Source: Macrostomum lignano (taxonomy: Eukaryota). From it: a stretch of DNA of 64,000 nt. Under the pieces are notes generated by a model. The model searched no databases, was not told the origin of the DNA, and saw nothing but the letters and a program-made list of their open reading frames with translations. The stretch's first letter is position 1. Each line of letters starts with the position of its first letter. The DNA is taken from positions 62,001 to 126,000 of the forward strand of contig NIVC01002892.1 of assembly GCA_002269645.1 (NCBI GenBank). The letters are read 5' to 3'. Position numbers and translations under genes: made by a program. This document shows positions 20,436 to 52,431 of this stretch, piece after piece.

Positions 20436-20475
20436 TAAAGCTGACGTTAGACCCAGCTGGATTGAAAACGTCGCC

Positions 20476-23358: not shown

Positions 23359-23489
23359 CTTGTGTGCCGCCTGTCTGTTTCTGTGCCGCCTGTCTGCTTC
23401 TGTGCCGCCTGTCTGCTTCTGTGCCGCCTGTCTGCTTCTGTGCCGCCTGTCTGCTTCTGTGCCGCTTCTTCTTCTTCTGCTTCTTGTGT

Positions 23490-26563: not shown

Positions 26564-26679
26564 AGCTCTGGTTTCTCTTCATTCCACGATTAAATCTTTC
26601 GCCTTTTACTAAAGATTTCCGTGGAGGGATACTTTTAGGAGAATTCTCTAGTTTTTGCAGGCCTTTCCTAGAAAGGCTT
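26564..26679 (+). ncRNA. U5: U5 spliceosomal snRNA gene, full length
   Basis: 5' CTCTGGTTTCTCTTC; stem AAATCTTT/AAAGATTT enclosing the invariant loop 1 CGCCTTTTACT (26600-26610); CCGTGGAG; Sm-like site AGTTTTTG (26650-26657); 3' hairpin GCCTTTC-CTA-GAAAGGC. Colinear with metazoan U5 as I know it; the ends are approximate. Confidence 0.92.
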
Positions 26680-26705
26680 ATTGGAAGTTGAATAGTTTAG
26701 ACTAG
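26611..26705 (+). repeat. 95-bp direct repeat DR1 = U5 3' half plus ~26 nt of downstream flank
   Basis: AAAGATTTCC...TTTAGACTAG, repeated at 33068-33161, 39519-39613, 45996-46090 and 52337-52431. Confidence 0.95.
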
Positions 26706-26897
26706 CCTAGCTTAGCTCTTGAAAGTACTTTAGTTAGCCTTCCATTCCACTGTACATTTGTTTTTATCTCTACCCCACCCCTAGTCTTATCTTGCAGTCG
26801 CCCCACCCCTCTCAGCGAGCGCACTTTGTGTGCCTCCTGACTCATTAGTTAGTTGTAGTTTAGGTTTAGTTTGAGTGTACCCAAATAATCACGCCAT

Positions 26898-29602
26898 ATG
26901 GCTGCAAATCGCGCCAGCGCTAAAAAGATGGACTGCCGGCCCTCTCTCGAGCACCGGTATCGTCCGAACGAAGCCTACGGTCGCCAGCTTCTTGGACTGA
27001 CGCCGACAGCTGAGCCATCGACTGCGAGCCCGCCGCCAGCAGGCCTGATGCGAGCTCGACGCAGTCTGGAAGGCCGCCACTCGATCAGCCCACCGGCCGG
27101 CGAGCTCTTGCGCAACGCAGAGGAGATCCTGCGAGAGAATGAGCAGCTGCCGGAGGCTGCAGGCGCAGAGGCAGAGCAGCGCATGTCTCTCGACTGCGAC
27201 GAGCCAGGCCAGACAAGCGCCCTGCCATCCAACGAGGCCGCAGCAACCACCGAGCCACCAACTGCCGAGTCCAGCGAGCTCAGTGCGGCAGCGGCAGCGC
27301 CGACGTCTGAGGAGCGCCAGCAATCGGCTGCAGACCAGGCCTCGACGCTGCCAAAGCCCCCTGCCGAGCAACTGGACGCTGACATCAGTCAAATCATCTT
27401 CCCTGATGAGCCTGACTTGACTGACTGTCAGCAGACGATCTACGCCAGCGACAGCACCATCATCTATGCGCCCAAGTTCCTGAGCGAGGTCGCGGACCAA
27501 GTCTACGAGCGCCTGATCACCGACCTGCTGCCTCAAGCCTTTCAGCATCGTCCGAGTGAGCAGCGCCGCGTCTACTGGATCGGCCCGTCGTACACCTACA
27601 GCGGGGTTGAGCTGAAGGAAAATCTAGACTGGCATCAGGTAATTGAAGACATTCGTGACTTCATTTACCATGATACCCAGTTCGATGTCCCGAAGTTCAA
27701 CTCCGTGTTGGTGAACTTCTACACCGAGCCGGGAGACCGGATTCCCTGGCACTCGGACGATGAGGATGAGCTCGGCGACAGGCCGACGATCGCGACCGTG
27801 TCCTTCGGCGCTGAGCGGCTGTTCATGCTGCGCCGTCGGGACGGCAACGTGACGCACCGCTTTCCAACGCTGCCAGGCTCGCTGATTCTGATGGCAGGAA
27901 ACTGCCAGAAACGCCTGCAGCACCAGGTGCCCGCCGCCCACTCTCAGAATGGCGTCCGCATCTCGCTAACATTCCGTGTCACCAAGCCGGAGCTGCGGCG
28001 CAAGCGGCTCTGCCGGATGACCCGACCTACAGCCAGCCGCTAAACGGCGGCCCATTCGGCGACGACCAAGGCGGTCGGGACGACGACCAAGGCGGCCACG
28101 ACGACGACCAGGGCGGCCGGGGCGACGACAGGCCCCAGGAGCGGCAGGCGACGGCGACGCGAGACCGCGAAGGCGATCGGGGTCGGCGCGGCCGTGGCGG
28201 CCACCAGCGAGGCAGGCGAGGAGGTCGCGGCGCGGCGTCCGGTGCGGCGGCGGCTTCGGCGGCTTCCTGGCCGGCCGGTGCGGCGGCGGCTTCGGCGACA
28301 AGCGCGCAGGCGGCTGCGGCAGCGCGGCCCTACGCGCAGGTTGCGGCGCGCCCTGCGCCGCCCAGAAGGCCCCAGGCTGCCATCCCGCCGATCGTTTTTG
28401 AGGTGCACCGGGACGCGGCCAACAAGCTGATGCAGTTCGTTGCCTGGCTGCAGACCAACTTTGCCGGCGAAGCTAGAGCCGTCAACACTGCGCCGATGGC
28501 GAATCAGCCGGCCTATCTCGTGTTCCCAGCGTCGGAGCGGGACTACAACGTCTTCCTGGGCGGCGCGCTGCGCGAGGAGAAGCTGCTCGAGCATCCCGTA
28601 AAGCGCCGTCCAGCCCGAGCCCGACCGCTGGACAACAGAACAGGGCCCGACAGAGTGCAGCAGCAGCCGGTACGCACCTTCGTCGCTACTGAGGTGCCCC
28701 TCGCATTCTCGGAGGCTGACTTCGCGACCCTGTTGCGCGGCACGCTCAAGCTGGACATTGTCAGCGTCCACAGAATCCGAGCCAGAGCGACTGGGAAGGC
28801 AACCCAGTTCGTGCGCATCTTCACAAAGTCGGCGATGACCTACGAGAAGTGCCTCCGCGATGGCATCTGCACCGACTTCTTGAAGTTCAACTGCGAGGAC
28901 AGCCGCACAGACGAGCCGGTCCGCGCTCTGCAATGCCAGCGCTGCCAGGAGTTCGGCCACCGCGCTGCTCAGTGTCGGGGGCAGCAGCGCTGCCGGATTT
29001 GCGGCGGCCAGCATTCCTGGAAGGAGTGCCAGCACGAGGGCCCAGCGGTCTGCGCCAACTGCGGCGGCTCGCACCGAACCACCAGTCGAGCCTGCACCGT
29101 CGCCAAGGCGGAGCACGACAAGGCGACCAGAGCGGCTGCTGAGGCCAAAGCCGCGGCGCGAGCTGCGGAAGCTGCGGCCGCTGCTGCCCCAGTGTCAAGT
29201 GAGACCGACGACGCCGCCGCCGACGACGACTCCGACAGCGGCTGGCTGATCCGCCGAGGCAGGCGCACGGTGCCGGTACCCGCCGCGATCCGGCCGCTTG
29301 TCATCGTGACCGATGATGCCAGGAGCGCTCCGGCGGCAGAGACCGAGTCTGATGTCAATGCGACTGCTCCGTCAGCTGATGCCGGCCAGGCGGTGCAGCT
29401 GCAGCTTAGTGACTTTATGTCGGTGGTGAGCATGCTGTTGCCCCTGATCACCCGCTCTCTGACTCAAGTGGTTGTGCAGGCCCTGTCCCGACCGCCTGGG
29501 GAGGTCCTCACTGTGGAATCAACCAGTAAAATGGTTGAGGACATTGTGCGGGCTGCACTCCAGGAAGTGCCGGGCATGGCTGGCATGACCACTGAGTCCT
29601 AG
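26898..29602 (+). CDS. ORF1 copy 1: AlkB (ALKBH2/3-like 2OG-Fe(II) dioxygenase) fused to a gag-like RRM/triple zinc-knuckle protein; 1-nt frameshift at ~28006
   Basis: AlkB at ~27459-27980: YTYSG, FNSVLVNFY, WHSD (H at 27750), QHQVP, RISLTFR. Knuckles CQRCQEFGHRAAQC, CRICGGQHSWKEC, CANCGGSHRTTSRAC. Copies 2-4 have CAAGCGAGCTC where this copy has CAAGCGGCTC. Confidence 0.9.
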
Positions 29603-29688
29603 TCTCAGGCAGCTAAACTCAAGACTTGAATTGAAACTTCAGTGCGTTAACTGTAGACTCAAACAATCAAACCACAGCCCTGAAGATT

Positions 29689-32469
29689 ATGCATTTAAAC
29701 TGCAGGGGATTCAACCCGAAAATCAGAGAGCTGACACAGTGGGTCGTCAGTCAGGAGCTAGACATTGCCCTCTTTTCTGAGACCATTCTCAAAAGTTGTC
29801 ACACTGTCCAGATTCCCGGGTACTCCATCATTCGGTATGATACCCCGCAAGTCAAACGCGGGCTTCTCCTTGCCCACTCTCCTCGCGTCAAACTCACAAA
29901 TGTGCGCTTGCAGTATGACAATGTCAACCATGAAGCCATCTCTTGCACCGTGAGCTTGTCTGACAACTCTGGTCCTGACTTCAATCTCGCTCTGGTGTAC
30001 AGGTCTCCAGCACCGTACCATCTGAACCTGAACCTACTCAAAAATCTTCTCTCTCGTAGGCGCAGTGTGCTCATGGGTGACCTCAATGCCAGACACCGCT
30101 TCCTCGGGGGTGACAGCAGCAACAACATGGCTGGCTACCAGCTGCACGACTGGCTGTCTGAGGGCCCCACCTCGCCCACCATTCTCAATCAAGCCGGTCA
30201 GTTCACCAGACTGGCCACCAAAAACGGGCTGATTTCTAGGAATGTCTTGGACCTCGCCCTGGCCACTGAGGACTTTCTCCCATTTGTGCAGAACTTTGAG
30301 GTGGGTCCTGACCTGGGCAGTGACCACTTACCTATAATCCTCACGCTCAATATTCAGTCGAAGAAATGGGCTGGTCCCCCCAGACCCAAAAACTTCTCAA
30401 AAACAAACTGGGACGAGTTCAGACTCAAAATCAGTGAAGCTTTGAGCTCAGATCAGAATATTAAATTATCAAATGCTGACCAAATCAATGCCGAAGTGGA
30501 TCACATCACAAAGGCCATTCACACCGTGATTGACTCCACAGTACCAGACTGTGGTGCCAAAAACGCCCTACCCAAGTACATCCTCGACCTGATCAAAGAG
30601 CGCAGACGACTCAGACGCCTCTTCTTCAGCACACGGGATCAAAATTTCAAAACCCAAGCAAACCAGCTCGCAAATCGCATAAAGAGAGAAATTAACTCCT
30701 TCCAGAATGGAAAGCTCACCAAAGTCTGTGAGAGTATTGTTGAAAACAGCAAGAACAAGAAAGTGAAGAATTTCTGGCATGACACTAAAAAGCTGATGGG
30801 CAAATTTAAGCCAACCTCGATCCCCAGCCTCACCCTGGGTCAAACAACTGCGCACACAGATCTGGAGAAGGCTAACCTTCTAGCCGAGACTCTGGACTCA
30901 AAGATGCGCCCAGTCCCTTCCACATGCGAACAGCTCAAACGTGAGGTGGCCGATGTGGCACAGCTCACCTCATTCTACCCCGTTCCTGAGGGAATCGAAC
31001 CCATCGAGACCCACCCACTTGATGCTGCATTCTCTGTGGCAGACACAGTGTGGGAACTGGAGCACCTCAGGCCTGATGGAGCACCCGGGCTGGACAAGAT
31101 TCCCAACTGCGTCCTCAAGCTGGGCTTAGAGGGGGTGGCAATCACGAGACTCACTAACCTCTTCAACGCCTGCTACGGTCGAGGGATTTTCCCCAGCGCC
31201 TGGAAGAAAGCTGTGGTGACAATGATCCCCAAGCCGGACAAACCGCCCGAACACCCCAACTCCTACAGACCAATCAGCCTGACCTCATGTCTGGGCAAAG
31301 TGTTTGAGAAGCTTATAGCAAAAAGACTCACCAAGCACCTTGAGGATAATAAGACCCTAGGAGATGACCAATGCGCCTACCGCAAAATTCACTCCACGTA
31401 TGACAACCTGTGCCGTCTGGCACAAGATGTCATGGTAGCAAAGTGCAAAGCTAAAAAGTCCGCTGCAGTCTTCCTGGATGCAGAGGCAGCTTTTGACTCC
31501 ACCTGGCACGACAAGATCAGGCATAGCATGCTCACCGATGGTTTTCCACCTATGCTCATGCGAATCCTGTCTGACTACCTGCGAGACAGACAGATCCAGG
31601 TTCGAATCGAGGGGGCCCTAAGCGATCCCCACACCATCCAGGCTGGCGTCCCTCAGGGAGGCATTCTGAGCCCTCTCCTGTACCTCCTCTTCGTCAGCTC
31701 AATGCCGACTCCCACCATCTCAAGCGTCAAACGCAGTCAATTCGCAGACGACATGGCCGTCTGGGCCTCAGCAGACACCTTTGCGGGGCTCCGAACATCC
31801 CTTCAAAGCTACCTCAGACGAGTCTTTGACTGGTGCGGTAAACAAGGCATTAGACTGAATGCCGGTAAAAGCAAAGCAATCGCTTTCAACTACAAACCCA
31901 CTAGGCGCATGGACTTGCGACCCAAACTGTATCTGGGGGACACTGAGGTTCCGTACTGTCAGGAGGTGAAATTCCTGGGTGTCCTCCTTGACCAGAGCCT
32001 CTGCCTGAACAAACATGTGGACAACATGGCAGATACCAGCAGAGCCATTGTAATGTCACTGTGCAGAATTGCAAAAATGACAAAGCTGAGTAGCACCACC
32101 CTCAGAATGCTGTACAGGGCATACGGAGAAAGCGCTCTCACCTACGGAGCGCCAATCCTGAGCCAAATCTGTGCGACTAACCAAATCAAATTGCAGAAAA
32201 TTCAAAACCTGGCTCTCCGTATCTGCTATGGTGTGCCATCCTACATCAGCATTGAATACCTGCACAAGCTGGCAGGTATGCCGATGCTCGCAGACAGGGT
32301 CAAGCAGCTGGGGGTGGCTTGGCTGCTCAAGATGAGGGCAGCCAAGCTCCACAGCTTCCACATTGAGCCGGAAGCCCCTCGGGCTCCGGGCCGAACCCCT
32401 GTCCTCAATGTCCTCTGGGATGCCATGAGGCGTCGGGAAAGAAACAGGGGATTCCCACCCCAGGGTTAG
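29689..32469 (+). CDS. ORF2 copy 1: APE endonuclease plus reverse transcriptase, intact, 926 aa, no RNase H
   Basis: APE: HLNCRG, FSET, GDLNARH, SDHLPI. RT: PGLDKIP, YRPISLTS, FLDAEAAFD, GVPQGGILSPLLY, FADD. Confidence 0.96.
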   Translation: MHLNCRGFNPKIRELTQWVVSQELDIALFSETILKSCHTVQIPGYSIIRYDTPQVKRGLLLAHSPRVKLTNVRLQYDNVNHEAISCTVSLSDNSGPDFNLALVYRSPAPYHLNLNLLKNLLSRRRSVLMGDLNARHRFLGGDSSNNMAGYQLHDWLSEGPTSPTILNQAGQFTRLATKNGLISRNVLDLALATEDFLPFVQNFEVGPDLGSDHLPIILTLNIQSKKWAGPPRPKNFSKTNWDEFRLKISEALSSDQNIKLSNADQINAEVDHITKAIHTVIDSTVPDCGAKNALPKYILDLIKERRRLRRLFFSTRDQNFKTQANQLANRIKREINSFQNGKLTKVCESIVENSKNKKVKNFWHDTKKLMGKFKPTSIPSLTLGQTTAHTDLEKANLLAETLDSKMRPVPSTCEQLKREVADVAQLTSFYPVPEGIEPIETHPLDAAFSVADTVWELEHLRPDGAPGLDKIPNCVLKLGLEGVAITRLTNLFNACYGRGIFPSAWKKAVVTMIPKPDKPPEHPNSYRPISLTSCLGKVFEKLIAKRLTKHLEDNKTLGDDQCAYRKIHSTYDNLCRLAQDVMVAKCKAKKSAAVFLDAEAAFDSTWHDKIRHSMLTDGFPPMLMRILSDYLRDRQIQVRIEGALSDPHTIQAGVPQGGILSPLLYLLFVSSMPTPTISSVKRSQFADDMAVWASADTFAGLRTSLQSYLRRVFDWCGKQGIRLNAGKSKAIAFNYKPTRRMDLRPKLYLGDTEVPYCQEVKFLGVLLDQSLCLNKHVDNMADTSRAIVMSLCRIAKMTKLSSTTLRMLYRAYGESALTYGAPILSQICATNQIKLQKIQNLALRICYGVPSYISIEYLHKLAGMPMLADRVKQLGVAWLLKMRAAKLHSFHIEPEAPRAPGRTPVLNVLWDAMRRRERNRGFPPQG

Positions 32470-33067
32470 GCTGGCTACCAGCCTTCCAAACCGGAAGTGA
32501 CCACGCTCTGAAACGCAACTAATAAAACTAAACTTGCTGCCTGAGACAGAGATCGGTTGATCAGTCATTAGGACTGATTAGGTAATCTCTATGTCTCCTC
32601 GCGTTTCTTTTTACAATTTTCCCAACTGTGTTTTTTACCCAACTGCTCTACAAATATCACTAATTGCTTTTTTACACCTTTACTATATTCATTCTATTTT
32701 TACAACTAAATTCAAATATGCGCTATTGCATTTTAATCTCTTTTTTTTACTTAAATGTCTTGCTTTTATTCTCAATAGGCCTTCAAATATCTAGCACGTA
32801 TTTTTTAGATGTCCTGTTTTTATTAGATCCCTTCTTTGTGCGGGATTTCCCTCCCCTCTTTTTTATCCCCAAATGCGTGCAAAATACTGCAAAATATTGA
32901 AAAATAGTTTTATATATGTATATTTTTAATTTCAATATTCGTATTAAATATTCAAATCGAAATCTTGTAAATATTTTTAATTCTTTCGATCAAATACAAA
33001 ATATAACTGCGGCAGAGTTCTTCGGAACTGACCCGCGCCGGTTTCGACGGCACCTCGTTTTAACAAC

Positions 33068-33161
33068 AAAGATTTCCGTGGAGGGATACTCTTAGGAGAA
33101 TTCTCTAGTTTTTGCAGGCCTTTCCTAGAAAGGCTTATTGAAGTTGAATAGTTTAGACTAG
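33068..33161 (+). repeat. DR2: orphan U5 3' half (94 bp) between copies 1 and 2
   Basis: Matches DR1 apart from one substitution and a 1-nt deletion at a site polymorphic among DRs. Confidence 0.93.
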
Positions 33162-33350
33162 CCTAGCTTAGCTCTTAAAGTACTTTAGTTAGCCTTCCAT
33201 TCCACTGTACATTTGTTTTTATCTCTACCCCACCCCTAGTCTTATCTTGCAGTCGCCCCACCCCTCTCAGCGAGCGCACTTTGTGTGCCTCCTGACTCAT
33301 TAGTTAGTTGTAGTTTAGTTTAGTTGAGTGCACCCAAATAATCACGCCAT

Positions 33351-36052
33351 ATGGCTGCAAATCGCGCCAGCGCTAAAAAGATGGACTGCCGGCCCTCTCT
33401 CGAGCACCGGTATCGTCCGAACGAAGCCTACGGTCGCCAGCTTCTTGGACTGACGCCGACAGCTGAGCCATTGACTGCGAGCCCGCCGCCAGCAGGCCAG
33501 ATGCGAGCTCGACGCAGTCTGGAAGGCCGCCACTCGATCAGCCCACCGGCCGGCGAGCTCTTGCGCAACGCAGAGGAGATCCTGCGAGAGAATGAGCAGC
33601 TGCCGGAGGCTGCAGGCGCAGAGGCAGAGCAGCGCATGTCTCTCGACTGCGACGAGCCAGGCCAGACAAGCGCCCTGCCATCCAACGAGGCCGCAGCAAC
33701 CACCGAGCCACCAACTGCCGAGTCCAGCGAGCTCAGTGCGGCAGCGGCAGCGCCGACGTCTGAGGAGCGCCAGCAATCGGCTGCAGACCAGGCCTCGACG
33801 CTGCCAAAGCCCCCTGCCGAGCAACTGGACGCTGACATCAGTCAAATCATCTTCCCTGATGAGCCTGACTTGACTGACTGTCAGCAGACGATCTACGCCA
33901 GCGACAGCACCATCATCTATGCGCCCAAGTTCCTGAGCGAGGTCGCGGACCAAGTCTACGAGCGCCTGATCACCGACCTGCTGCCTCTGCCTTTCAGCAT
34001 CGTCCGAGTGAGCAGCGCCGCGTCTACTGGATCGGCCCGTCGTACACCTACAGCGGGGTTGAGCTGAAGGAAAATCTAACTGGCATCAGGTAATTGAAGA
34101 CATTCGTGACTTCATTTACCATGATACCCAGTTCGATGTCCCGAAGTTCAACTCCGTGTTGGTGAACTTCTACACCGAGCCGGGAGACCGGATTCCCTGG
34201 CACTCGGACGATGAGGATGAGCTCGGCGACAGGCCGACGATCGCGACCGTGTCCTTCGGCGCTGAGCGGCTGTTCATGCTGCGCCGTCGGGACGGCAACG
34301 TGACGCACCGCTTTCCAACGCTGCCAGGCTCGCTGATTCTGATGGCAGGAAACTGCCAGAAACGCCTGCAGCACCAGGTGCCCGCCGCCCACTCTCAGAA
34401 TGGCGTCCGCATCTCGCTAACATTCCGTGTCACCAAGCCGGAGCTGCGGCGCAAGCGAGCTCTGCCGGATGACCCGACCTACAGCCAGCCGCTAAACGGC
34501 GGCCCATTCGGCGACGACCAAGGCGGTCGGGACGACGACCAAGGCGGCCACGACGACGACCAGGGCGGCCGGGGCGACGACAGGCCCCAGGAGCGGCAGG
34601 CGACGGCGACGCGAGACCGCGAAGGCGATCGGGGTCGGCGCGGCCGTGGCGGCCACCAGCGAGGCAGGCGAGGAGGTCGCGGCGCGGCGTCCGGTGCGGC
34701 GGCGGCTTCGGCGGCTTCCTGGCCGGCCGGTGCGGCGGCGGCTTCGGCGACAAGCGCGCAGGCGGCTGCGGCAGCGCGGCCCTACGCGCAGGTTGCGGCG
34801 CGCCCTGCGCCGCCCAGAAGGCCCCAGGCTGCCATCCCGCCGATCGTTTTTGAGGTGCACCGGGACGCGGCCAACAAGCTGATGCAGTTCGTTGCCTGGC
34901 TGCAGACCAACTTTGCCGGCGAAGCTAGAGCCGTCAACACTGCGCCGATGGCGAATCAGCCGGCCTATCTCGTGTTCCCAGCGTCGGAGCGGGACTACAA
35001 CGTCTTCCTGGGCGGCGCGCTGCGCGAGGAGAAGCTGCTCGAGCATCCCGTAAAGCGCCGTCCAGCCCGAGCCCGACCGCTGGACAACAGAACAGGGCCC
35101 GACAGAGTGCAGCAGCAGCCGGTACGCACCTTCGTCGCTACTGAGGTGCCCCTCGCATTCTCGGAGGCTGACTTCGCGACCCTGTTGCGCGCACGCTCAA
35201 GCTGGACATTGTCAGCGTCCACAGAATCCGAGCCAGAGCGACTGGGAAGGCAACCCAGTTCGTGCGCATCTTCACAAAGTCGGCGATGACCTACGAGAAG
35301 TGCCTCCGCGATGGCATCTGCACCGACTTCTTGAAGTTCAACTGCGAGGACAGCCGCACAGACGAGCCGGTCCGCGCTCTGCAATGCCAGCGCTGCCAGG
35401 AGTTCGGCCACCGCGCTGCCAGTGTCGGGGGCAGCAGCGCTGCCGGATTTGCGGCGGCCAGCATTCCTGGAAGGAGTGCCAGCACGAGGGCCCAGCGGTC
35501 TGCGCCAACTGCGGCGGCTCGCACCGAACCACCAGTCGAGCCTGCACCGTCGCCAAGGCGGAGCACGACAAGGCGACCAGAGCGGCTGCTGAGGCCAAAG
35601 CCGCGGCGCGAGCTGCGGAAGCTGCGGCCGCTGCTGCCCCAGTGTCAAGTGAGACCGACGACGCCGCCGCCGACGACGACTCCGACAGCGGCTGGCTGAT
35701 CCGCCGAGGCAGGCGCACGGTGCCGGTACCCGCCGCGATCCGGCCGCTTGTCATCGTGACCGATGATGCCAGGAGCGCTCCGGCGGCAGAGACCGAGTCT
35801 GATGTCAATGCGACTGCTCCGTCAGCTGATGCCGGCCAGGCGGTGCAGCTGCAGCTTAGTGACTTTATGTCGGTGGTGAGCATGCTGTTGCCCCTGATCA
35901 CCCGCTCTCTGACTCAAGTGGTTGTGCAGGCCCTGTCCCGACCGCCTGGGGAGGTCCTCACTGTGGAATCAACCAGTAAAATGGTTGAGGACATTGTGCG
36001 GGCTGCACTCCAGGAAGTGCCGGGCATGGCTGGCATGACCACTGAGTCCTAG
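33351..36052 (+). pseudogene. ORF1 copy 2 (AlkB-gag) with 1-nt deletions at ~33989, ~34078, ~35191 and ~35420
   Basis: Same motifs as copy 1, split over several ORF pieces; the shifts may be assembly errors. Confidence 0.85.
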
Positions 36053-36138
36053 TCTCAGGCAGCTAAACTCAAGACTTGAATTGAAACTTCAGTGCGTTAA
36101 CTGTAGACTCAAACAATCAAACCACAGCCCTGAAGATT

Positions 36139-38918
36139 ATGCATTTAAACTGCAGGGGATTCAACCCGAAAATCAGAGAGCTGACACAGTGGGTCGTCAG
36201 TCAGGAGCTAGACATTGCCCTCTTTTCTGAGACCATTCTCAAAAGTTGTCACACTGTCCAGATTCCCGGGTACTCCATCATTCGGTATGATACCCCGCAA
36301 GTCAAACGCGGGCTTCTCCTTGCCCACTCTCCTCGCGTCAAACTCACAAATGTGCGCTTGCAGTATGACAATGTCAACCATGAAGCCATCTCTTGCACCG
36401 TGAGCTTGTCTGACAACTCTGGTCCTGACTTCAATCTCGCTCTGGTGTACAGGTCTCCAGCACCGTACCATCTGAACCTGAACCTACTCAAAAATCTTCT
36501 CTCTCGTAGGCGCAGTGTGCTCATGGGTGACCTCAATGCCAGACACCGCTTCCTCGGGGGTGACAGCAGCAACAACATGGCTGGCTACCAGCTGCACGAC
36601 TGGCTGTCTGAGGGCCCCACCTCGCCCACCATTCTCAATCAAGCCGGTCAGTTCACCAGACTGGCCACCAAAAACGGGCTGATTTCTAGGAATGTCTTGG
36701 ACCTCGCCCTGGCCACTGAGGACTTTCTCCCATTTGTGCAGACTTTGAGGTGGGTCCTGACCTGGGCAGTGACCACTTACCTATAATCCTCACGCTCAAT
36801 ATTCAGTCGAAGAAATGGGCTGGTCCCCCCAGACCCAAAAACTTCTCAAAAACAAACTGGGACGAGTTCAGACTCAAAATCAGTGAAGCTTTGAGCTCAG
36901 ATCAGAATATTAAATTATCAAATGCTGACCAAATCAATGCCGAAGTGGATCACATCACAAAGGCCATTCACACCGTGATTGACTCCACAGTACCAGACTG
37001 TGGTGCCAAAAACGCCCTACCCAAGTACATCCTCGACCTGATCAAAGAGCGCAGACGACTCAGACGCCTCTTCTTCAGCACACGGGATCAAAATTTCAAA
37101 ACCCAAGCAAACCAGCTCGCAAATCGCATAAAGAGAGAAATTAACTCCTTCCAGAATGGAAAGCTCACCAAAGTCTGTGAGAGTATTGTTGAAAACAGCA
37201 AGAACAAGAAAGTGAAGAATTTCTGGCATGACACTAAAAAGCTGATGGGCAAATTTAAGCCAACCTCGATCCCCAGCCTCACCCTGGGTCAAACAACTGC
37301 GCACACAGATCTGGAGAAGGCTAACCTTCTAGCCGAGACTCTGGACTCAAAGATGCGCCCAGTCCCTTCCACATGCGAACAGCTCAAACGTGAGGTGGCC
37401 GATGTGGCACAGCTCACCTCATTCTACCCCGTTCCTGAGGGAATCGAACCCATCGAGACCCACCCACTTGATGCTGCATTCTCTGTGGCAGACACAGTGT
37501 GGGAACTGGAGCACCTCAGGCCTGATGGAGCACCCGGGCTGGACAAGATTCCCAACTGCGTCCTCAAGCTGGGCTTAGAGGGGGTGGCAATCACGAGACT
37601 CACTAACCTCTTCAACGCCTGCTACGGTCGAGGGATTTTCCCCAGCGCCTGGAAGAAAGCTGTGGTGACAATGATCCCCAAGCCGGACAAACCGCCCGAA
37701 CACCCCAACTCCTACAGACCAATCAGCCTGACCTCATGTCTGGGCAAAGTGTTTGAGAAGCTTATAGCAAAAAGACTCACCAAGCACCTTGAGGATAATA
37801 AGACCCTAGGAGATGACCAATGCGCCTACCGCAAAATTCACTCCACGTATGACAACCTGTGCCGTCTGGCACAAGATGTCATGGTAGCAAAGTGCAAAGC
37901 TAAAAAGTCCGCTGCAGTCTTCCTGGATGCAGAGGCAGCTTTTGACTCCACCTGGCACGACAAGATCAGGCATAGCATGCTCACCGATGGTTTTCCACCT
38001 ATGCTCATGCGAATCCTGTCTGACTACCTGCGAGACAGACAGATCCAGGTTCGAATCGAGGGGGCCCTAAGCGATCCCCACACCATCCAGGCTGGCGTCC
38101 CTCAGGGAGGCATTCTGAGCCCTCTCCTGTACCTCCTCTTCGTCAGCTCAATGCCGACTCCCACCATCTCAAGCGTCAAACGCAGTCAATTCGCAGACGA
38201 CATGGCCGTCTGGGCCTCAGCAGACACCTTTGCGGGGCTCCGAACATCCCTTCAAAGCTACCTCAGACGAGTCTTTGACTGGTGCGGTAAACAAGGCATT
38301 AGACTGAATGCCGGTAAAAGCAAAGCAATCGCTTTCAACTACAAACCCACTAGGCGCATGGACTTGCGACCCAAACTGTATCTGGGGGACACTGAGGTTC
38401 CGTACTGTCAGGAGGTGAAATTCCTGGGTGTCCTCCTTGACCAGAGCCTCTGCCTGAACAAACATGTGGACAACATGGCAGATACCAGCAGAGCCATTGT
38501 AATGTCACTGTGCAGAATTGCAAAAATGACTAAGCTGAGTAGCACCACCCTCAGAATGCTGTACAGGGCATACGGAGAAAGCGCTCTCACCTACGGAGCG
38601 CCAATCCTGAGCCAAATCTGTGCGACTAACCAAATCAAATTGCAGAAAATTCAAAACCTGGCTCTCCGTATCTGCTATGGTGTGCCATCCTACATCAGCA
38701 TTGAATACCTGCACAAGCTGGCAGGTATGCCGATGCTCGCAGACAGGGTCAAGCAGCTGGGGGTGGCTTGGCTGCTCAAGATGAGGGCAGCCAAGCTCCA
38801 CAGCTTCCACATTGAGCCGGAAGCCCCTCGGGCTCCGGGCCGAACCCCTGTCCTCAATGTCCTCTGGGATGCCATGAGGCGTCGGGAAAGAAACAGGGGA
38901 TTCCCACCCCAGGGTTAG
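36139..38918 (+). pseudogene. ORF2 copy 2 (APE-RT) with a 1-nt deletion at ~36741
   Basis: ORF pieces 36139-36786 and 36750-38918 join to give the copy 1 protein. Confidence 0.88.
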
Positions 38919-39518
38919 GCTGGCTACCAGCCTTCCAAACCGGAAGTGACCACGCTCTGAAACGCAACTAATAAAACTAAACTTGCTGCCTGAGACAGAG
39001 ATCGGTTGATCAGTCATTAGGACTGATTAGGTAATCTCTATGTCTCCTCGCGTTTCTTTTTACAATTTTCCCAACTGTGTTTTTTACCCAACTGCTCTAC
39101 AAATATCACTAATTGCTTTTTTACACCTTTACTATATTCATTCTATTTTTACAACTAAATTCAAATATGCGCTATTGCATTTTTAATCTCTATTTTTTTA
39201 CTTAAATGTCTTGCTTTTACTCTCAATAGGCCTTCAAATATCTAGCACGTATTTTTTAGATGTCCTGTTTTTATTAGATCCCTTCTTTGTGCGGGATTTC
39301 CCTCCCCTCTTTTTTATCCCCAAATGCGTGCAAAATACTGCAAAATATTGAAAAATAGTTTTATATATGTATATTTTTAATTTCAATATTCGTATTAAAT
39401 ATTCAAATCGAAATCTTGTAAATATTTTTAATTCTTTCGATCAAATACAAAATATAACTGCGGCAGAGTTCTTCGGAACTGACCCGCGCCGGTTTCGACG
39501 GCACCTCGTTTTAACAAC

Positions 39519-39613
39519 AAAGATTTCCGTGGAGGGATACTCTTAGGAGAATTCTCTAGTTTTTGCAGGCCTTTCCTAGAAAGGCTTATTAGAAGTTGAA
39601 TAGTTTAGACTAG
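39519..39613 (+). repeat. DR3: orphan U5 3' half (95 bp)
   Basis: Direct match to DR1 and DR5. Confidence 0.93.
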
Positions 39614-39804
39614 CCTAGCTTAGCTCTTAAAGTACTTTAGTTAGCCTTCCATTCCACTGTACATTTGTTTTTATCTCTACCCCACCCCTAGTCTTATCTT
39701 GCAGTCGCCCCACCCCTCTCAGCGAGCGCACTTTGTGTGCCTCCTGACTCATTAGTAGTTGTCTAGTTTAGTTTAGTGTGAGTGCACCCAAATAATCACG
39801 CCAT

Positions 39805-42527
39805 ATGGCTGCAAATCGCGCCAGCGCTAAAAAGATGGACTGCCGGCCCTCTCTCGAGCACCGGTATCGTCCGAACGAAGCCTACGGTCGCCAGCTTCTT
39901 GGACTGACGCCGACAGCTGAGCCATTGACTGCGAGCCCGCCGCCAGCAGGCCAGATGCGAGCTCGACGCAGTCTGGAAGGCCGCCACTCGATCAGCCCAC
40001 CGGCCGGCGAGCTCTTGCGCAACGCAGAGGAGATCCTGCGAGAGAATGAGCAGCTGCCGGAGGCTGCAGGCGCAGAGGCAGAGCAGCGCATGTCTCTCGA
40101 CTGCGACGAGCCAGGCCAGACAAGCGCCCTGCCATCCAACGAGGCCGCAGCAACCACCGAGCCACCAACTGCCGAGTCCAGCGAGCTCAGTGCGGCAGCG
40201 GCAGCGCCGACGTCTGAGGAGCGCCAGCAATCGGCTGCAGACCAGGCCTCGACGCTGCCAAAGCCCCCTGCCGAGCAACTGGACGCTGACATCAGTCAAA
40301 TCATCTTCCCTGATGAGCCTGACTTGACTGACTGTCAGCAGACGATCTACGCCAGCGACAGCACCATCATCTATGCGCCCAAGTTCCTGAGCGAGGTCGC
40401 GGACCAAGTCTACGAGCGCCTGATCACCGACCTGCTGCCTCTGCCTTTCAGCATCGTCCGAGTGAGCAGCGCCGCGTCTACTGGATCGGCCCGTCGTACA
40501 CCTACAGCGGGGTTGAGCTGAAGGAAAATCTAGACTGGCATCAGGTAATTGAAGACATTCGTGACTTCATTTACCATGATACCCAGTTCGATGTCCCGAA
40601 GTTCAACTCCGTGTTGGTGAACTTCTACACCGAGCCGGGAGACCGGATTCCCTGGCACTCGGACGATGAGGATGAGCTCGGCGACAGGCCGACGATCGCG
40701 ACCGTGTCCTTCGGCGCTGAGCGGCTGTTCATGCTGCGCCGTCGGGACGGCAACGTGACGCACCGCTTTCCAACGCTGCCAGGCTCGCTGATTCTGATGG
40801 CAGGAAACTGCCAGAAACGCCTGCAGCACCAGGTGCCCGCCGCCCACTCTCAGAATGGCGTCCGCATCTCGCTAACATTCCGTGTCACCAAGCCGGAGCT
40901 GCGGCGCAAGCGAGCTCTGCCGGATGACCCGACCTACAGCCAGCCGCTAAACGGCGGCCCATTCGGCGACGACCAAGGCGGTCGGGACGACGACCAAGGC
41001 GGCCACGACGACGACCAGGGCGGCCGGGGCGACGACAGGCCCCAGGAGCGGCAGGCGACGGCGACGCGAGACCGCGAAGGCGATCGGGGTCGGCGCGGCC
41101 GTGGCGGCCACCAGCGAGGCAGGCGAGGAGGTCGCGGCGCGGCGTCCGGTGCGGCGGCGGCTTCGGCGGCTTCCTGGCCGGCCGGTGCGGCGGCGGCTTC
41201 GGCGACAAGCGCGCAGGCGGCTGCGGCAGCGCGGCCCTACGCGCAGGTTGCGGCGCGCCCTGCGCCGCCCAGAAGGCCCCAGGCTGCCATCCCGCCGATC
41301 GTTTTTGAGGTGCACCGGGACGCGGCCAACAAGCTGATGCAGTTCGTTGCCTGGCTGCAGACCAACTTTGCCGGCGAAGCTCGAGCCGTCAACACTGCGC
41401 CGATGGCGAATCAGCCGGCCTATCTCGTGTTCCCAGCGTCGGAGCGGGACTACAACGTCTTCCTGGGCGGCGCGCTGCGCGAGGAGAAGCTGCTCGAGCA
41501 TCCCGTAAAGCGCCGTCCAGCCCGAGCCCGACCGCTGGACAACAGAACAGGGCCCGACAGAGTGCAGCAGCAGCCGGTACGCACCTTCGTCGCTACTGAG
41601 GTGCCCCTCGCATTCTCGGAGGCTGACTTCGCGACCCTGTTGCGCGACACGCTCAAGCTGGACATTGTCAGCGTCCACAGAATCCGAGCCAGAGCGACTG
41701 GGAAGGCAACCCAGTTCGTGCGCATCTTCACAAAGTCGGCGATGACCTACGAGAAGTGCCTCCGCGATGGCATCTGCACCGACTTCTTGAAGTTCAACTG
41801 CGAGGACAGCCGCACAGACGAGCCGGTCCGCGCTCTGCAATGCCAGCGCTGCCAGGAGTTCGGCCACCGCGCTGCCCAGTGTCGGGGGCAGCAGCGCTGC
41901 CGGATTTGCGGCGGCCAGCATTCCTGGAAGGAGTGCCAGCACGAGGGCCCAGCGGTCTGCGCCAACTGCGGCGGCTCGCACCGAACCACCAGTCGAGCCT
42001 GCACCGTCGCCAAGGCGGAGCACGACAAGGCGACCAGAGCGGCTGCTGAGGCCAAAGCCGCGGCGCGAGCTGCGGAAGCTGCGGCCGCTGCTGCCCCAGT
42101 GTCAAGTGAGACCGACGACGCCGCCGCCGACGACGACTCCGACAGCGGCTGGCTGATCCGCCGAGGCAGGCGCACGGTGCCGGTACCCGCCGCGATCCGG
42201 CCGCTTGTCATCGTGACCGATGATGCCAGGAGCGCTCCGGCGGCAGAGACCGAGTCTGCAGCAGCTGCCAGCGCTGATGTCAATGCGACTGCTCCGTCAG
42301 CTGATGCCGGCCAGGCGGTGCAGCTGCAGCTTAGTGACTTTATGTCGGTGGTGAGCATGCTGTTGCCCCTGATCACCCGCTCTCTGACTCAAGTGGTTGT
42401 GCAGGCCCTGTCCCGACCGCCTGGGGAGGTCCTCACTGTGGAATCAACCAGTAAAATGGTTGAGGACATTGTGCGGGCTGCACTCCAGGAAGTGCCGGGC
42501 ATGGCTGGCATGACCACTGAGTCCTAG
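39805..42527 (+). CDS. ORF1 copy 3 (AlkB-gag, 907 aa if the single 1-nt deletion at ~40443 is corrected)
   Basis: ORF 40611-42527 runs unbroken from the AlkB catalytic core through all three zinc knuckles, which proves the fusion. Confidence 0.88.
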
Positions 42528-42613
42528 TCTCAGGCAGCTAAACTCAAGACTTGAATTGAAACTTCAGTGCGTTAACTGTAGACTCAAACAATCAAACCAC
42601 AGCCCTGAAGATT

Positions 42614-45393: not shown

Positions 45394-45995
45394 GCTGGCT
45401 ACCAGCCTTCCAAACCGGAAGTGACCACGCTCTGAAACGCAACTAATAAAACTAAACTTGCTGCCTGAGACAGAGATCGGTTGATCAGTCATTAGGACTG
45501 ATTAGGTAATCTCTATGTCTCCTCGCGTTTCTTTTTACAATTTTCCCAACTGTGTTTTTTACCCAACTGCTCTACAAATATCACTAATTGCTTTTTTACA
45601 CCTTTACTATATTCATTCTATTTTTACAACTAAATTCAAATATGCGCTATTGCATTTTTAATCTCTATTTTTTTTTACTTAAATGTCTTGCTTTTACTCT
45701 CAATAGGCCTTCAAATATCAAGCACGTATTTTTTAGATGTCCTGTTTTTATTAGATCCCTTCTTTGTGTGGGATTTCCCTCCCCTCTTTTTTATCCCCAA
45801 ATGCGTGCAAAATACTGCAAAATATTGAAAAATAGTTTTATATATGTATATTTTTAATTTCAATATTCGTATTAAATATTCAAATCGAAATCTTGTAAAT
45901 ATTTTTAATTCTTTCGATCAAATACAAAATATAACTGCGGCAGAGTTCTTCGGAACTGACCCGCGCCGGTTTCGACGGCACCTCGTTTTAACAAC

Positions 45996-46090
45996 AAAGA
46001 TTTCCGTGGAGGGATACTCTTAAGAGAATTCTCTAGTTTTTGCAGGCCTTTCCTAGAAAGGCTTATTAGAAGTTGAATAGTTTAGACTAG
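45996..46090 (+). repeat. DR4: orphan U5 3' half (95 bp)
   Basis: Direct match, with a G>A variant at 46023. Confidence 0.93.
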
Positions 46091-46173
46091 CCTAGCTTAG
46101 CTCTTAAAAGTACTTTAGTTAGCCTTCCATTCCACTGTACATTTGTTTTTATCTCTACCCCACCCCTAGTCTT

Positions 46174-48864: not shown

Positions 48865-48950
48865 TCTCAGGCAGCTAAACTCAAGACTTGAATTGAAACT
48901 TCAGTGCGTTAACTGTAGACTCAAACAATCAAACCACAGCCCTGAAGATT

Positions 48951-52336: not shown

Positions 52337-52431
52337 AAAGATTTCCGTGGAGGGATACTCTTAGGAGAATTCTCTAGTTTTTGCAGGCCTTTCCTAGAAA
52401 GGCTTATTAGAAGTTGAATAGTTTAGACTAG
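52337..52431 (+). repeat. DR5: terminal U5 3' half, followed by unrelated flank (ATTGAAGG...)
   Basis: Similarity to the unit stops abruptly after TTTAGACTAG. Confidence 0.93.

What the first reader, a model, noticed from the sequence alone, without database searches (positions are those of the whole stretch)
27459..27980. Retrotransposon ORF1 carries a catalytically intact ALKBH2/3-like AlkB demethylase
All hallmark residues are present in every copy: N-x-Y (NFY), H-x-D (HSD), distal H (QHQVP), R-x5-R (RISLTFR), plus the YTYS substrate-lid motif. Overlapping unbroken ORFs in copies 3 and 4 prove an in-frame fusion to the gag-like knuckles. ALKBH2/3 enzymes remove m1A/m3C from single-stranded nucleic acid, these lesions stall reverse transcriptase, and plant RNA viruses carry AlkB domains. 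Tethered to the ORF1 RNP, the domain could repair the template RNA or cDNA, or counter host RNA methylation (inference).
Basis: partly seen in the sequence, partly recalled or inferred. Interest (0 to 1): 0.9.

Follow-up and report, generated by a model that had tools for sequence, protein, structure and literature searches.

The report
LINE retrotransposon ORF1 carrying AlkB demethylase
A flatworm jumping gene (a LINE retrotransposon) has an ALKBH3-like nucleic-acid demethylase fused to its RNA-binding coat protein, and the fusion is conserved across a whole lineage of such elements, which suggests that base methylation of the template limits their copying.

Summary
Window 27459-27980 encodes an AlkB domain (Pfam PF13532, E=8e-22). 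Its best solved relatives are human ALKBH3 and then ALKBH2, by sequence and by predicted fold. All Fe(II)/2-oxoglutarate ligands are present.

The domain lies in ORF1 of a ~6.45 kb non-LTR retrotransposon. Four head-to-tail copies, 98.7-99.7% identical, occupy 26611-52432 on a Macrostomum lignano contig.

The inferred ORF1 is ~907 codons: disordered N-terminus, AlkB, low-complexity linker, two RRM folds, three CCHC knuckles. ORF2 is APE endonuclease plus reverse transcriptase.

No copy has an unbroken ORF1 in this assembly. Seven of 12 single-base indels sit on columns that vary among the other copies, so they are probably consensus artefacts. Copy 3 reads AlkB through to the stop in one frame.

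The fusion is not a local accident. Complete, unbroken AlkB-RRM-CCHC ORF1s (757-962 aa, 25-37% identical) occur in other datasets, followed by APE-RT ORF2s. The catalytic residues are invariant and AlkB is the most conserved part of ORF1.

AlkB-bearing ORF2s form a clade (bootstrap 100). The sister clade lacks AlkB. The element AlkBs cluster apart from host ALKBH3.

The function is inferred, not shown: removal of RT-blocking m1A/m3C from the element's own RNA or cDNA. I found no published report of AlkB in a LINE ORF1.

The parts
26611..52432 (+). Head-to-tail tandem array of 4 full units of the retrotransposon plus the first 95 bp of a fifth unit. Junctions read ...TTTTAACAAC|AAAGATTTCCG, with a (CAA)n tail.
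   Evidence: Self-BLAST, 4-copy alignment, junction read-out
26898..29602 (+). Copy 1 ORF1 (inferred ~907 codons). It is broken once, by a missing A at 28006, so the called ORFs are 26898-28043 and 28403-29602.
27459..27980 (+). Copy 1 AlkB (2OG-Fe(II) dioxygenase) domain, the finding itself. Motifs: YTYS 27591, NFY 27714, HSD 27750, HQVP 27921, RISLTFR 27957.
   Evidence: Pfam E=8.1e-22; ALKBH3 E=8e-24; AF2 pLDDT 88.7 and Foldseek TM 0.83 to ALKBH3; motif coordinates
27981..28381 (+). Copy 1 low-complexity linker, Asp/Gly-, RGG- and Ala-rich. It is not conserved among family members.
   Evidence: aa identity 0.33 to L002
28382..28933 (+). Copy 1 tandem RRM-like region. Coordinates were carried over from copy 3 (41289-41840).
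   Evidence: AF2 model of 41289-42077: two beta-alpha-beta-beta-alpha-beta folds with pLDDT >90; Foldseek hits to tandem-RRM proteins, E 5e-7
28934..29095 (+). Copy 1 three zinc knuckles: CX2CX4HX4C, CX2CX3HX4C, CX2CX3HX6C.
   Evidence: cysteines and histidines invariant in alignment A5
29689..32469 (+). Copy 1 ORF2, 926 aa, unbroken: APE endonuclease plus reverse transcriptase, no RNase H.
   Evidence: Pfam RVT_1 1.6e-36, Exo_endo_phos_2 2.2e-11
33068..39518 (+). Copy 2. ORF1 33351-36052 has 4 frameshifts (33988, 34078, 35191, 35419). AlkB is ~33912-34431. ORF2 36139-38918 has a frameshift at 36741.
39519..45995 (+). Copy 3. ORF1 39805-42527 has one frameshift at 40442. AlkB is ~40366-40886. 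ORF2 42614-45393 has a frameshift at 42978.
40443..42527 (+). Copy 3 single unbroken frame (694 codons) from within AlkB through the linker, RRMs and knuckles to the ORF1 stop. This is the direct evidence in the window for the in-frame fusion.
   Evidence: (Pfam AlkB 3e-21 in this frame)
45996..52339 (+). Copy 4, the most diverged. A 143-bp 5' deletion removes the ORF1 ATG. AlkB ~46703-47224 carries Tyr234His (YTHS). ORF1 has a frameshift at 47423. ORF2 48951-51732 has an extra A at 49821.

Best explanation
Shown:
- The window holds four tandem copies of a non-LTR (LINE) retrotransposon of Macrostomum lignano.
- ORF1 is a canonical RNA-binding ORF1p (two RRM folds plus three CCHC knuckles) with an N-terminal AlkB-family Fe(II)/2-oxoglutarate dioxygenase of the ALKBH3/ALKBH2 subtype added in frame. 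A ~130-residue low-complexity linker joins the two parts.
- The fusion defines a monophyletic lineage of LINEs. It was acquired once, after that lineage split from AlkB-less relatives.
- The domain is kept under purifying selection with every catalytic ligand invariant.

Inferred:
- ORF1p coats the RNA that encoded it. The tethered AlkB then oxidatively removes N1-methyladenine and N3-methylcytosine, the ALKBH3 substrates. These block Watson-Crick pairing and stall reverse transcriptases.
- It would act on the single-stranded template RNA, and possibly on the nascent cDNA or exposed target DNA. ORF2p could then complete target-primed reverse transcription and make full-length, correct copies.
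For: Identity of the domain:
- Pfam AlkB E=8e-22.
- Best PDB sequence hits: ALKBH3 8e-24, ALKBH2 1e-15.
- AF2 model pLDDT 88.7; Foldseek ALKBH3 TM 0.83, ALKBH2 0.82, ALKBH5 only 0.65.

LINE context:
- APE+RT ORF2, tandem RRMs, three knuckles.
- In-frame fusion in copy 3.

Conservation elsewhere:
- L002: ORF2 56% identical; AlkB, RRM and CCHC in one frame.
- P0142-P0145: complete ORF1s of 757-962 aa with AlkB plus three knuckles.
- L005 and L007: those ORF1s are followed by APE-RT ORF2s.
- Further M. lignano subfamilies: P0146-P0148, P0150, P0151, P0291.

Selection:
- N-x-Y, H-x-D, distal H and R..LTFR are invariant in 10 ORF1s that are 24-42% identical overall.
- Window versus L002: AlkB has the highest aa identity (0.63) and the lowest dN (0.355, dN/dS ~0.25) of all ORF1 regions.
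- Among the window copies: ORF2 has 22 synonymous and 6 non-synonymous differences, ORF1 has 12 and 10.

Single origin:
- ORF2 tree: the AlkB+ clade has bootstrap 100. Sister-clade elements L009 and L010 have knuckle-bearing ORF1s without AlkB.
- AlkB tree: element AlkBs form one clade (bootstrap 66), apart from metazoan ALKBH3 including the M. lignano host gene P0198 (bootstrap 85).

From established knowledge (my own, not tested here):
- ALKBH3 demethylates m1A and m3C in ssDNA and RNA (Aas et al. 2003).
- AlkB pre-treatment is used to let RTs read through m1A/m3C/m1G in tRNA sequencing.
- Viral AlkB domains repair RNA (van den Born et al. 2008, as cited in PMC9289625).
Against: - There are no biochemical or genetic data. 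Substrate and target are inferred from homology to ALKBH3 alone.
- None of the four window copies has an unbroken ORF1 as assembled, and copy 4 has Tyr234His at the base-stacking position. Activity of these particular copies is therefore unproven.
- dS between the compared elements is near saturation (1.2-1.4), so dN/dS values are rough.
- Support for monophyly of the element AlkBs is moderate (66%), and the donor is unresolved.
- It is unknown whether LINE RNA in flatworms carries m1A/m3C at levels that matter.
- ALKBH3-type enzymes have also been reported on other substrates.
Confidence: 0.55

Rival explanations
1. Epitranscriptomic counter-defence or host manipulation. The ORF1p-borne AlkB erases a regulatory methyl mark (m6A or similar on the element's mRNA, or marks on host tRNA/mRNA) that the host uses to destabilise, sequester or silence the transcript. 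This is what has been proposed for the orchid Ty3/Gypsy AlkB and for some plant RNA viruses. On this reading it is not lesion repair.
For: - There is precedent. The orchid Gypsy ORF2 has an AlkB domain with m6A demethylase activity in vitro (PMC9289625).
- m6A writers and erasers modulate L1 retrotransposition (PMC7873242, listed).
- The catalytic residues are invariant, which fits any catalytic role.
Against: The domain is of the ALKBH3/ALKBH2 subtype by sequence and fold. It is clearly further from the m6A erasers: ALKBH5 gives TM 0.65 against 0.83 for ALKBH3, and no ALKBH5 or FTO hit appears in the sequence search. Nothing is known here about m6A on this RNA.
Confidence: 0.25
2. Non-catalytic or relic module. 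The AlkB fold serves only as an extra single-strand nucleic-acid-binding domain, or is a neutral passenger picked up by template switching and now decaying.
For: - All four window copies carry frameshifts in ORF1, and copy 4 has Tyr234His.
- The region before the QRRVYWIGP strand is shortened relative to other AlkBs and has low model confidence.
Against: - The Fe(II) ligands (H-x-D...H) and the 2OG ligands (N-x-Y, R-x5-R) are invariant across ORF1s only 24-42% identical overall, while the linkers have diverged beyond recognition.
- AlkB has the lowest dN in ORF1.
- Intact ORFs exist in several datasets.
- The window frameshifts coincide with polymorphic columns and look like consensus artefacts.
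Confidence: 0.07
3. Artefact. A host ALKBH3-like gene lies next to, or is mis-joined with, a LINE in a repeat-rich long-read assembly, so the fusion is not a real protein.
For: The contig is extremely repeat-rich. It carries single-base consensus errors. The host does have an ALKBH3-like gene (P0198).
Against: - The same junction is present in all four copies.
- The same architecture occurs in unbroken ORFs in independent assemblies from other runs, followed by APE-RT ORF2s.
- The element AlkBs are a clade distinct from host ALKBH3.
Confidence: 0.02

Closest known systems
Human ALKBH3 (and ALKBH2), AlkB-family Fe(II)/2-oxoglutarate dioxygenases that remove m1A/m3C
   Same: - Best sequence match (E=8e-24, ~40% identity over 147 residues) and best structural match (TM 0.83).
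- Same catalytic set: YTYS aromatic, N-x-Y, H-x-D, distal H, R-x5-R.
- Single-domain size, ~190 aa.
   Different: - It is not an orthologue. The element AlkBs form their own clade outside metazoan ALKBH3, which includes the host's own gene.
- Here the domain is the N-terminal module of a ~900-aa retrotransposon ORF1p with RRMs and zinc knuckles.
- The segment before the PRLTAWYG-equivalent strand is ~8 residues shorter.
AlkB domains inside replicase polyproteins of plant RNA viruses (Alpha-/Betaflexiviridae, Closteroviridae) and invertebrate RNA viruses
   Same: - A selfish RNA-templated replicator carries its own AlkB demethylase fused to a replication protein.
- The proposed role is to keep the single-stranded RNA template free of methyl lesions.
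- BFVD matches include Grapevine leafroll-associated virus 3, Little cherry virus 2, vitiviruses and Picornavirales polyproteins.
   Different: - Those domains sit in RdRp/helicase polyproteins of viruses, not in a retrotransposon nucleocapsid-like protein.
- They are structurally more distant (TM 0.6-0.7, 19-27% identity) than ALKBH3 is.
AlkB (paALKBH5-like) ORF of Phalaenopsis Ty3/Gypsy (Ogre/Tat) LTR retrotransposons (PMC9289625)
   Same: A retrotransposon lineage that acquired and kept an AlkB-family demethylase. Activity was shown in vitro for that one.
   Different: - That is an LTR element of plants.
- Its AlkB is in a separate extra ORF, not fused to gag.
- It is of the ALKBH5/m6A-eraser type.
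- It is a recent, genus-restricted acquisition.
- Here the element is a LINE of an animal, the domain is an ALKBH3-type in-frame ORF1p fusion, and it is shared by elements whose ORF2s are only 39% identical.
Type I LINE ORF1p (RRM plus CCHC knuckles, as in the Drosophila I factor and Jockey; Khazina & Weichenrieder 2009, my own knowledge) and esterase-bearing ORF1p of CR1/L2-type LINEs
   Same: - The C-terminal two thirds of ORF1 are two RRM folds followed by knuckles spaced CX2CX4HX4C / CX2CX3HX4C / CX2CX3HX6C.
- AlkB-less relatives of 370-600 aa share this part.
- The esterase case is precedent for an enzymatic accessory domain in ORF1p.
   Different: - No AlkB or other dioxygenase has been described in any ORF1p type, as far as I could find.
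- This ORF1 is about twice as long as that of its AlkB-less relatives.

Membership tests
AlkB family (Pfam PF13532, 2OG-FeII_Oxy_2) | Profile match above the curated gathering score | tested here: met
   78.8 bits against a cut-off of 31.2, E=8.1e-22. The same holds for relatives, at 73-110 bits.
AlkB family (Pfam PF13532, 2OG-FeII_Oxy_2) | Fe(II) facial triad H-x-D...H and 2-oxoglutarate ligands N-x-Y and R-x5-R | tested here: met
   H285/D287, H343, N273/Y275 and R354/R360 in copy 1. They are invariant in alignments A1, A2, A3 and A4.
AlkB family (Pfam PF13532, 2OG-FeII_Oxy_2) | Double-stranded beta-helix fold with an N-terminal nucleotide-recognition lid | tested here: met
   AF2 model pLDDT 88.7, pTM 0.87. 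Foldseek TM is 0.83 to ALKBH3 and 0.82 to ALKBH2. The lid segment (residues 41-50 of the model) has low confidence.
AlkB family (Pfam PF13532, 2OG-FeII_Oxy_2) | Oxidative demethylase activity | not testable with these tools
   This needs an enzyme assay.
ALKBH3/ALKBH2 subtype (m1A/m3C repair enzymes) as opposed to ALKBH5/FTO/ALKBH8 types | Closest to ALKBH3/2 by sequence and by fold | tested here: met
   phmmer against PDB returns only ALKBH3 (8e-24) and ALKBH2 (1e-15) at E<=0.01. The Foldseek order is ALKBH3, ALKBH2 >> ALKBH6, ALKBH8, E. coli AlkB, ALKBH5.
Orthologue or recent copy of host (metazoan) ALKBH3 | Nests within the metazoan ALKBH3 clade, next to the host gene | tested here: not met
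   NJ tree. Metazoan ALKBH3 plus M. lignano P0198 form a clade (bootstrap 85) that excludes the element AlkBs, which form their own clade (bootstrap 66). The backbone is unresolved.
Non-LTR (LINE) retrotransposon, APE type | ORF2 with an N-terminal apurinic-like endonuclease followed by reverse transcriptase; no LTRs | tested here: met
   Exo_endo_phos / Exo_endo_phos_2 plus RVT_1 in the 926-aa ORF2. No terminal repeats are seen; units abut head to tail with a (CAA)n tail.
Non-LTR (LINE) retrotransposon, APE type | Target-site duplications and 5'-truncated dispersed copies as evidence of retrotransposition | tested here: inconclusive
   Only one tandem array is visible and no TSD was recognised at its ends. 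The excess of synonymous differences between copy 4 and copies 1-3 implies descent from functional elements. The rest of the genome could not be searched.
Type I ORF1p (RRM plus CCHC) | At least one RRM followed by CCHC zinc knuckle(s) | tested here: met
   Two predicted RRM folds. Three knuckles have invariant Cys/His.
Jockey / I superfamily clade of LINEs | RT phylogeny with reference elements of the named clades | not tested
   No reference set was available. The only hints: no RNase H; the element groups with RNase H-less hits, one of which NCBI labels 'transposon X-element'; and the knuckle spacing.

The most novel reading that the evidence does not exclude
Methylation of the Watson-Crick face of bases (m1A/m3C, from alkylation damage or deposited by host methyltransferases) is a real barrier, or even a host defence, against reverse transcription of retroelement RNA in some invertebrates. 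One LINE lineage, and apparently also a Penelope-like element (L008), answered by capturing an eraser and tethering it to the RNP. That would be an epitranscriptomic arms race played out on the retrotransposition template, parallel to the one in AlkB-bearing RNA viruses.
Probability: 0.3. Interest if true: 0.85.

Novelty: new variant of a known kind. Interest (0 to 1): 0.72.

Why it matters
LINE ORF1 proteins are thought of as RNA chaperones or packaging proteins. The only accessory enzyme described in them so far is an esterase.

An ALKBH3-type demethylase fused to ORF1p, conserved over deep divergence, implies that base methylation of the template RNA or cDNA affects the fitness of retrotransposition. 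That hypothesis can be tested directly with a catalytic-dead mutant and with demethylation assays.

It extends the 'selfish replicators carry AlkB' pattern from plant and invertebrate RNA viruses and one plant LTR element to animal non-LTR elements.

It also corrects annotation. Several M. lignano UniProt entries named 'Fe2OG dioxygenase domain-containing protein' are retrotransposon ORF1 products, not host repair genes.

Finally, an RNP-tethered, single-strand-specific demethylase that works together with a reverse transcriptase could be useful for RT-based sequencing of modified RNA.

Tried and rejected
- **Word-indexed homologue search with copy 1 ORF1.** It found only its own contig plus stand-alone, mostly bacterial-type AlkBs. 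The family surfaced only in the exhaustive phmmer search.
- **Profile search with the AlkB-only family alignment.** It returned bacterial AlkBs (cyanobacteria, Bacteroidota, gamma-proteobacteria) and missed the known family members. It says little about taxonomic spread or about the donor.
- **Identifying the organisms behind the Logan/ENA runs** (SRR24204725, SRR28338156, SRR31628392/403/434, ERZ27299524). No paper cites them. The host range beyond M. lignano stays unknown.
- **Cluster names for AlkB-less ORF1 relatives.** They gave no clade label. LINE clade assignment (Jockey or I) is therefore untested.
- **Looking up the intact copy 1 ORF2 in other assemblies.** It is not on record, so the frameshift-as-artefact idea could not be checked against independent assemblies.
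- **PDB sequence search with the RRM-knuckle region.** It found only a weak CCHC hit. The RRMs were seen only by structure prediction.
- **NCBIfam 'alkb' equivalog.** It scored 25 bits against a cut-off of 231, so this is not an E. coli-type AlkB equivalog.
- **DNA comparison of UTRs with related loci.** Only coding similarity was found, so the element termini could not be refined.
- **No telomere repeats in the window.** A telomeric-array explanation for the tandem arrangement has no support.
- **Rejected readings.** Host gene or chimeric assembly; decaying passenger domain; m6A-eraser-type AlkB. See the rivals.
Full report
**1. What is at the coordinates**

Window 27459-27980 (+) translates without stops to IIYAPKFLSEVADQVYERL...RISLTFRV. 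It lies in a 381-codon ORF, 26898-28043.

- Pfam assigns aa 223-360 to 2OG-FeII_Oxy_2 (the AlkB family) at E=8.1e-22, 78.8 bits against a gathering score of 31.2.
- A phmmer search of all PDB sequences returns only human ALKBH3 (E=8e-24) and ALKBH2 (E~1e-15) at E<=0.01. E. coli AlkB is not reached.
- The NCBIfam E. coli-type 'alkb' equivalog is far below threshold.
- An AlphaFold2 model of 27420-28005, built on a 19-sequence alignment, is confident (pLDDT 88.7, pTM 0.87).
- Its best Foldseek matches are ALKBH3 bound to ssDNA (TM 0.83, E=3.5e-17) and ALKBH2 (TM 0.82). ALKBH6, ALKBH8, E. coli AlkB (~0.7) and ALKBH5 (0.65) are well behind.

**2. Context: a tandem array of a LINE**

The window is part of contig NIVC01002892.1 of assembly GCA_002269645.1. 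Several papers use that assembly as the Macrostomum lignano genome.

Self-comparison shows four head-to-tail units of ~6.45 kb: 26611-33067, 33068-39518, 39519-45995 and 45996-52339. The first 95 bp of a fifth unit follow, to 52432. The units are 98.7-99.7% identical. Junctions read ...TTTTAACAAC|AAAGATTTCCG, so the unit ends in a short (CAA)n tail.

Each unit has two ORFs.
- ORF2 is intact in copy 1 (29689-32469, 926 aa). It is an APE-type endonuclease plus reverse transcriptase, without RNase H.
- ORF1, placed on the four-copy alignment, is ~907 codons.
  - A ~185-aa N-terminus, apparently disordered.
  - The AlkB domain.
  - A ~130-aa Asp/Gly-, RGG- and Ala-rich linker.
  - A region that AlphaFold2 predicts with pLDDT >90 as two beta-alpha-beta-beta-alpha-beta folds. 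These match tandem-RRM proteins such as nucleolin, Pub1, HuR and U2AF65.
  - Three knuckles: CX2CX4HX4C, CX2CX3HX4C, CX2CX3HX6C.
  - A C-terminal tail.

This is a Type I ORF1p (RRM plus CCHC; classification from my own knowledge of Khazina & Weichenrieder 2009) with an AlkB module added at the N-terminal side.

**3. State of the four copies, gene by gene**

| Copy | ORF1 | ORF2 |
|---|---|---|
| 1 | one frameshift (A missing at 28006) | intact |
| 2 | four frameshifts (33988, 34078, 35191, 35419) | one (36741) |
| 3 | one frameshift (40442) | one (42978) |
| 4 | 143-bp 5' deletion removes the ATG; one frameshift (47423); Tyr234His (YTHS) | one extra A (49821) |

So 'every copy' is slightly overstated, and no copy has an unbroken ORF1 as assembled.

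However, 7 of the 12 isolated one-base indels fall exactly on alignment columns where the remaining copies differ by a substitution. Only ~61 of 6480 columns are variable. That coincidence is what a consensus caller produces when reads from near-identical repeats are mixed. I therefore regard most frameshifts as probable assembly artefacts. This is an inference, and I could not check it against raw reads.

The in-frame fusion is directly visible. Copy 3 reads 40443-42527 as one frame of 694 codons, from AlkB residue ~213 to the ORF1 stop. Pfam finds AlkB in that same frame. Copy 4 reads the N-terminus, AlkB and linker in one frame.

**4. The fusion is a family trait, not a local accident**

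The closest ORF2 relative, P0022, is 56% identical. Its contig L002 has an upstream ORF, cut by the contig end. That ORF contains the C-terminal half of an AlkB domain (Pfam 3.5e-20) in frame with the RRM-like region and three knuckles.

An exhaustive phmmer search of 1.84 billion representatives with the copy 3 frame found further members.
- Complete, Met-initiated, unbroken proteins of 843, 757, 962 and 892 aa (P0142-P0145). Each has AlkB (Pfam E 1e-28 to 1e-31) followed by three knuckles.
- Several M. lignano UniProt entries: A0A1I8JCX4, A0A1I8GKP7, A0A1I8HIG4, A0A1I8JRS9 and A0A1I8G3B4. Most are named only 'Fe2OG dioxygenase domain-containing protein'.

On contig L005, P0142 is followed by a 948-aa APE+RT ORF2 that is 39% identical to the window ORF2 over its full length. 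On L007, P0144 is followed by an APE-bearing ORF2.

**5. Selection**

In an alignment of ten family ORF1s that are 24-42% identical overall, the invariant columns are concentrated in AlkB. They include N-x-Y, H-x-D-D-E-x-E-L-G, the distal His and R-x-x-L-T-F-R-x-T. The linkers cannot be aligned.

Window copy 3 against L002, by region:

| Region | aa identity | dN | dN/dS |
|---|---|---|---|
| AlkB | 0.63 | 0.355 | ~0.25 |
| Knuckles | 0.55 | 0.419 | ~0.32 |
| RRM-like | 0.47 | 0.535 | ~0.45 |
| Linker | 0.33 | 0.836 | ~0.65 |

dS is ~1.2-1.4 in these regions, which is near saturation, so the ratios are rough.

Within the window, copy 4 differs from copies 1-3 by 22 synonymous and 6 non-synonymous changes in ORF2, and by 12 and 10 in ORF1. 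The copies therefore descend from elements that were under protein-level selection. They did not simply decay in place.

**6. Origin**

In a neighbour-joining tree of ORF2 (845 columns, 100 bootstraps), the window element, L002/P0022, P0023, P0024 and L005 form a clade with 100% support. Its sister clade has 99% support.

Two sister-clade elements, L009 and L010, have full ORF1s of 603 and 811 aa. These have knuckles but no AlkB, by Pfam at E<=0.1 and by BLASTP. More distant AlkB-less ORF1 relatives are 370-600 aa. The simplest reading is a single acquisition at the base of the AlkB+ clade.

In a tree of AlkB domains (183 columns), the element AlkBs group together (bootstrap 66). Metazoan ALKBH3 forms a separate clade (bootstrap 85). 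That clade includes the M. lignano host protein P0198 and ALKBH3 of a crinoid, a nemertean and a bird. The deep branches, including bacterial AlkBs, are unresolved. The domain is therefore ALKBH3-like in type, but it is not a recent copy of the host gene. The donor is unknown.

**7. Mechanism (inferred)**

ORF1p of LINEs binds the RNA that encoded it and forms the RNP that ORF2p reverse-transcribes at the target site (established L1/I-factor biology, my own knowledge). ALKBH3-type enzymes use Fe(II), 2-oxoglutarate and O2 to remove the methyl group from N1 of adenine and N3 of cytosine in single-stranded DNA and RNA. Those lesions abolish Watson-Crick pairing and stop or mislead reverse transcriptases, which is why AlkB treatment is used in tRNA sequencing (my own knowledge).

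A demethylase held on a long flexible linker next to two RRMs and three knuckles is well placed to sweep the coated single-stranded template, and perhaps the nascent cDNA or the exposed target strand. The expected benefit is more complete and more accurate copies. The parallel with AlkB domains in replicases of plant and invertebrate RNA viruses is close in logic, though those domains are structurally more distant (PMC9289625).

The main rival is erasure of a regulatory mark such as m6A, as shown in vitro for the orchid Ty3/Gypsy AlkB. The ALKBH3/2-type fold argues against this but does not exclude it. A non-catalytic role is hard to reconcile with the invariant metal and co-substrate ligands.

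**8. Novelty**

Full-text searches of ~8.3 million papers and preprints were run for AlkB together with non-LTR, LINE, ORF1, retrotransposon and Penelope-like. They returned the orchid LTR case and host-factor studies (ALKBH5/FTO acting on L1). None describes an AlkB domain in a LINE ORF1.

Subscription-only literature and Repbase/Dfam entries could not be searched. I rate it a new variant of a known kind: retroelement- or virus-encoded AlkB, and LINE ORF1p with an accessory enzyme.

**9. Limits**

- There is no experimental evidence.
- The organisms of the non-M. lignano datasets are unknown.
- The LINE clade is unnamed.
- The trees are distance-based.
- The activity of the window copies themselves is uncertain.
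- I did not build a mended full-length consensus of the element (see referred steps).

Noticed in passing
window 26611-52432: The four LINE units are arranged strictly head to tail with a (CAA)2-3 junction. The array starts exactly at the unit's 5' end and stops 95 bp into a fifth unit. No target-site duplication was recognised and there are no telomere repeats in the window. How such an array forms is open: repeated insertion at its own tail, unequal crossing-over, or assembly.
   Followed up: partly
window, alignment columns (e.g. 33988/40442, 35191, 35419, 36741, 42978): Seven of 12 isolated single-base indels among the copies fall on columns where the other copies differ by a substitution, although only ~1% of columns are variable. 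This looks like consensus-calling error in a long-read assembly of near-identical repeats rather than real frameshifts.
   Followed up: partly
window 29689-32469 versus 48951-51732: Differences between copy 4 and copies 1-3 in ORF2 are almost all synonymous (22 of 28) and are concentrated in codons 6-468 (25 of 28). Only 3 lie in codons 798-922. This suggests a mosaic history, by recombination or gene conversion between subfamilies.
   Followed up: no
L008:2120-7398 (Logan SRR19430222): A 1012-aa ORF carries an AlkB domain (Pfam 5e-31) that groups with the LINE AlkBs. It lies upstream of an ORF with weak RVT_1 (E=0.002) followed by GIY-YIG (E=0.002), the layout of a Penelope-like element. AlkB may therefore have been acquired or exchanged by a second class of retroelement.
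   Followed up: partly
proteins P0147, P0291, P0150, P0151, P0146 (UniProt A0A1I8JCX4, A0A1I8GKP7, A0A1I8HIG4, A0A1I8JRS9, A0A1I8G3B4): These M. lignano gene models are named 'Fe2OG dioxygenase domain-containing protein', or in one case 'HTH La-type RNA-binding domain-containing protein'. They are fragments or versions of AlkB-bearing LINE ORF1 proteins. At least three or four subfamilies exist in this species.
   Followed up: partly
L005:4346-4717: In the intact related element, a 123-codon ORF with no Pfam match sits between ORF1 and ORF2. It ends 8 nt inside the ORF2 start (4710). It could be an extra small ORF, or the true N-terminus of ORF2 reached by frameshifting.
   Followed up: no
window 59516-63910 (-): A 1464-aa ORF carries Helitron_like_N, a Rep-like motif and a PIF1-type helicase. 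This is an apparently intact Helitron transposase.
   Followed up: no
window 1-5038, 5752-7591, 9435-10404, 11145-13697, 14795-17963, 20040-25984, 53451-59502: More than a third of the window is minisatellite arrays with 15-66 bp units. Some are strongly strand-skewed in G/C. The long 'ORFs' called there (e.g. 45-3101, 10876-13737, 23346-24578, 25110-26108) are repeat read-through, not genes.
   Followed up: partly
window 8718-9197 (-): A short, diverged reverse-transcriptase fragment, 26% identical to the array's ORF2 over 163 aa, lies on the minus strand in a GC-rich block. It is a remnant of another LINE.
   Followed up: no
window 28100-28260 (copy 1 linker; also P0146): The linker after AlkB contains an RGG/RG-rich stretch (GDRGRRGRGGHQRGRRGGRG), a motif type that often binds RNA. 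It is present in M. lignano subfamilies but not in the other family members.
   Followed up: no
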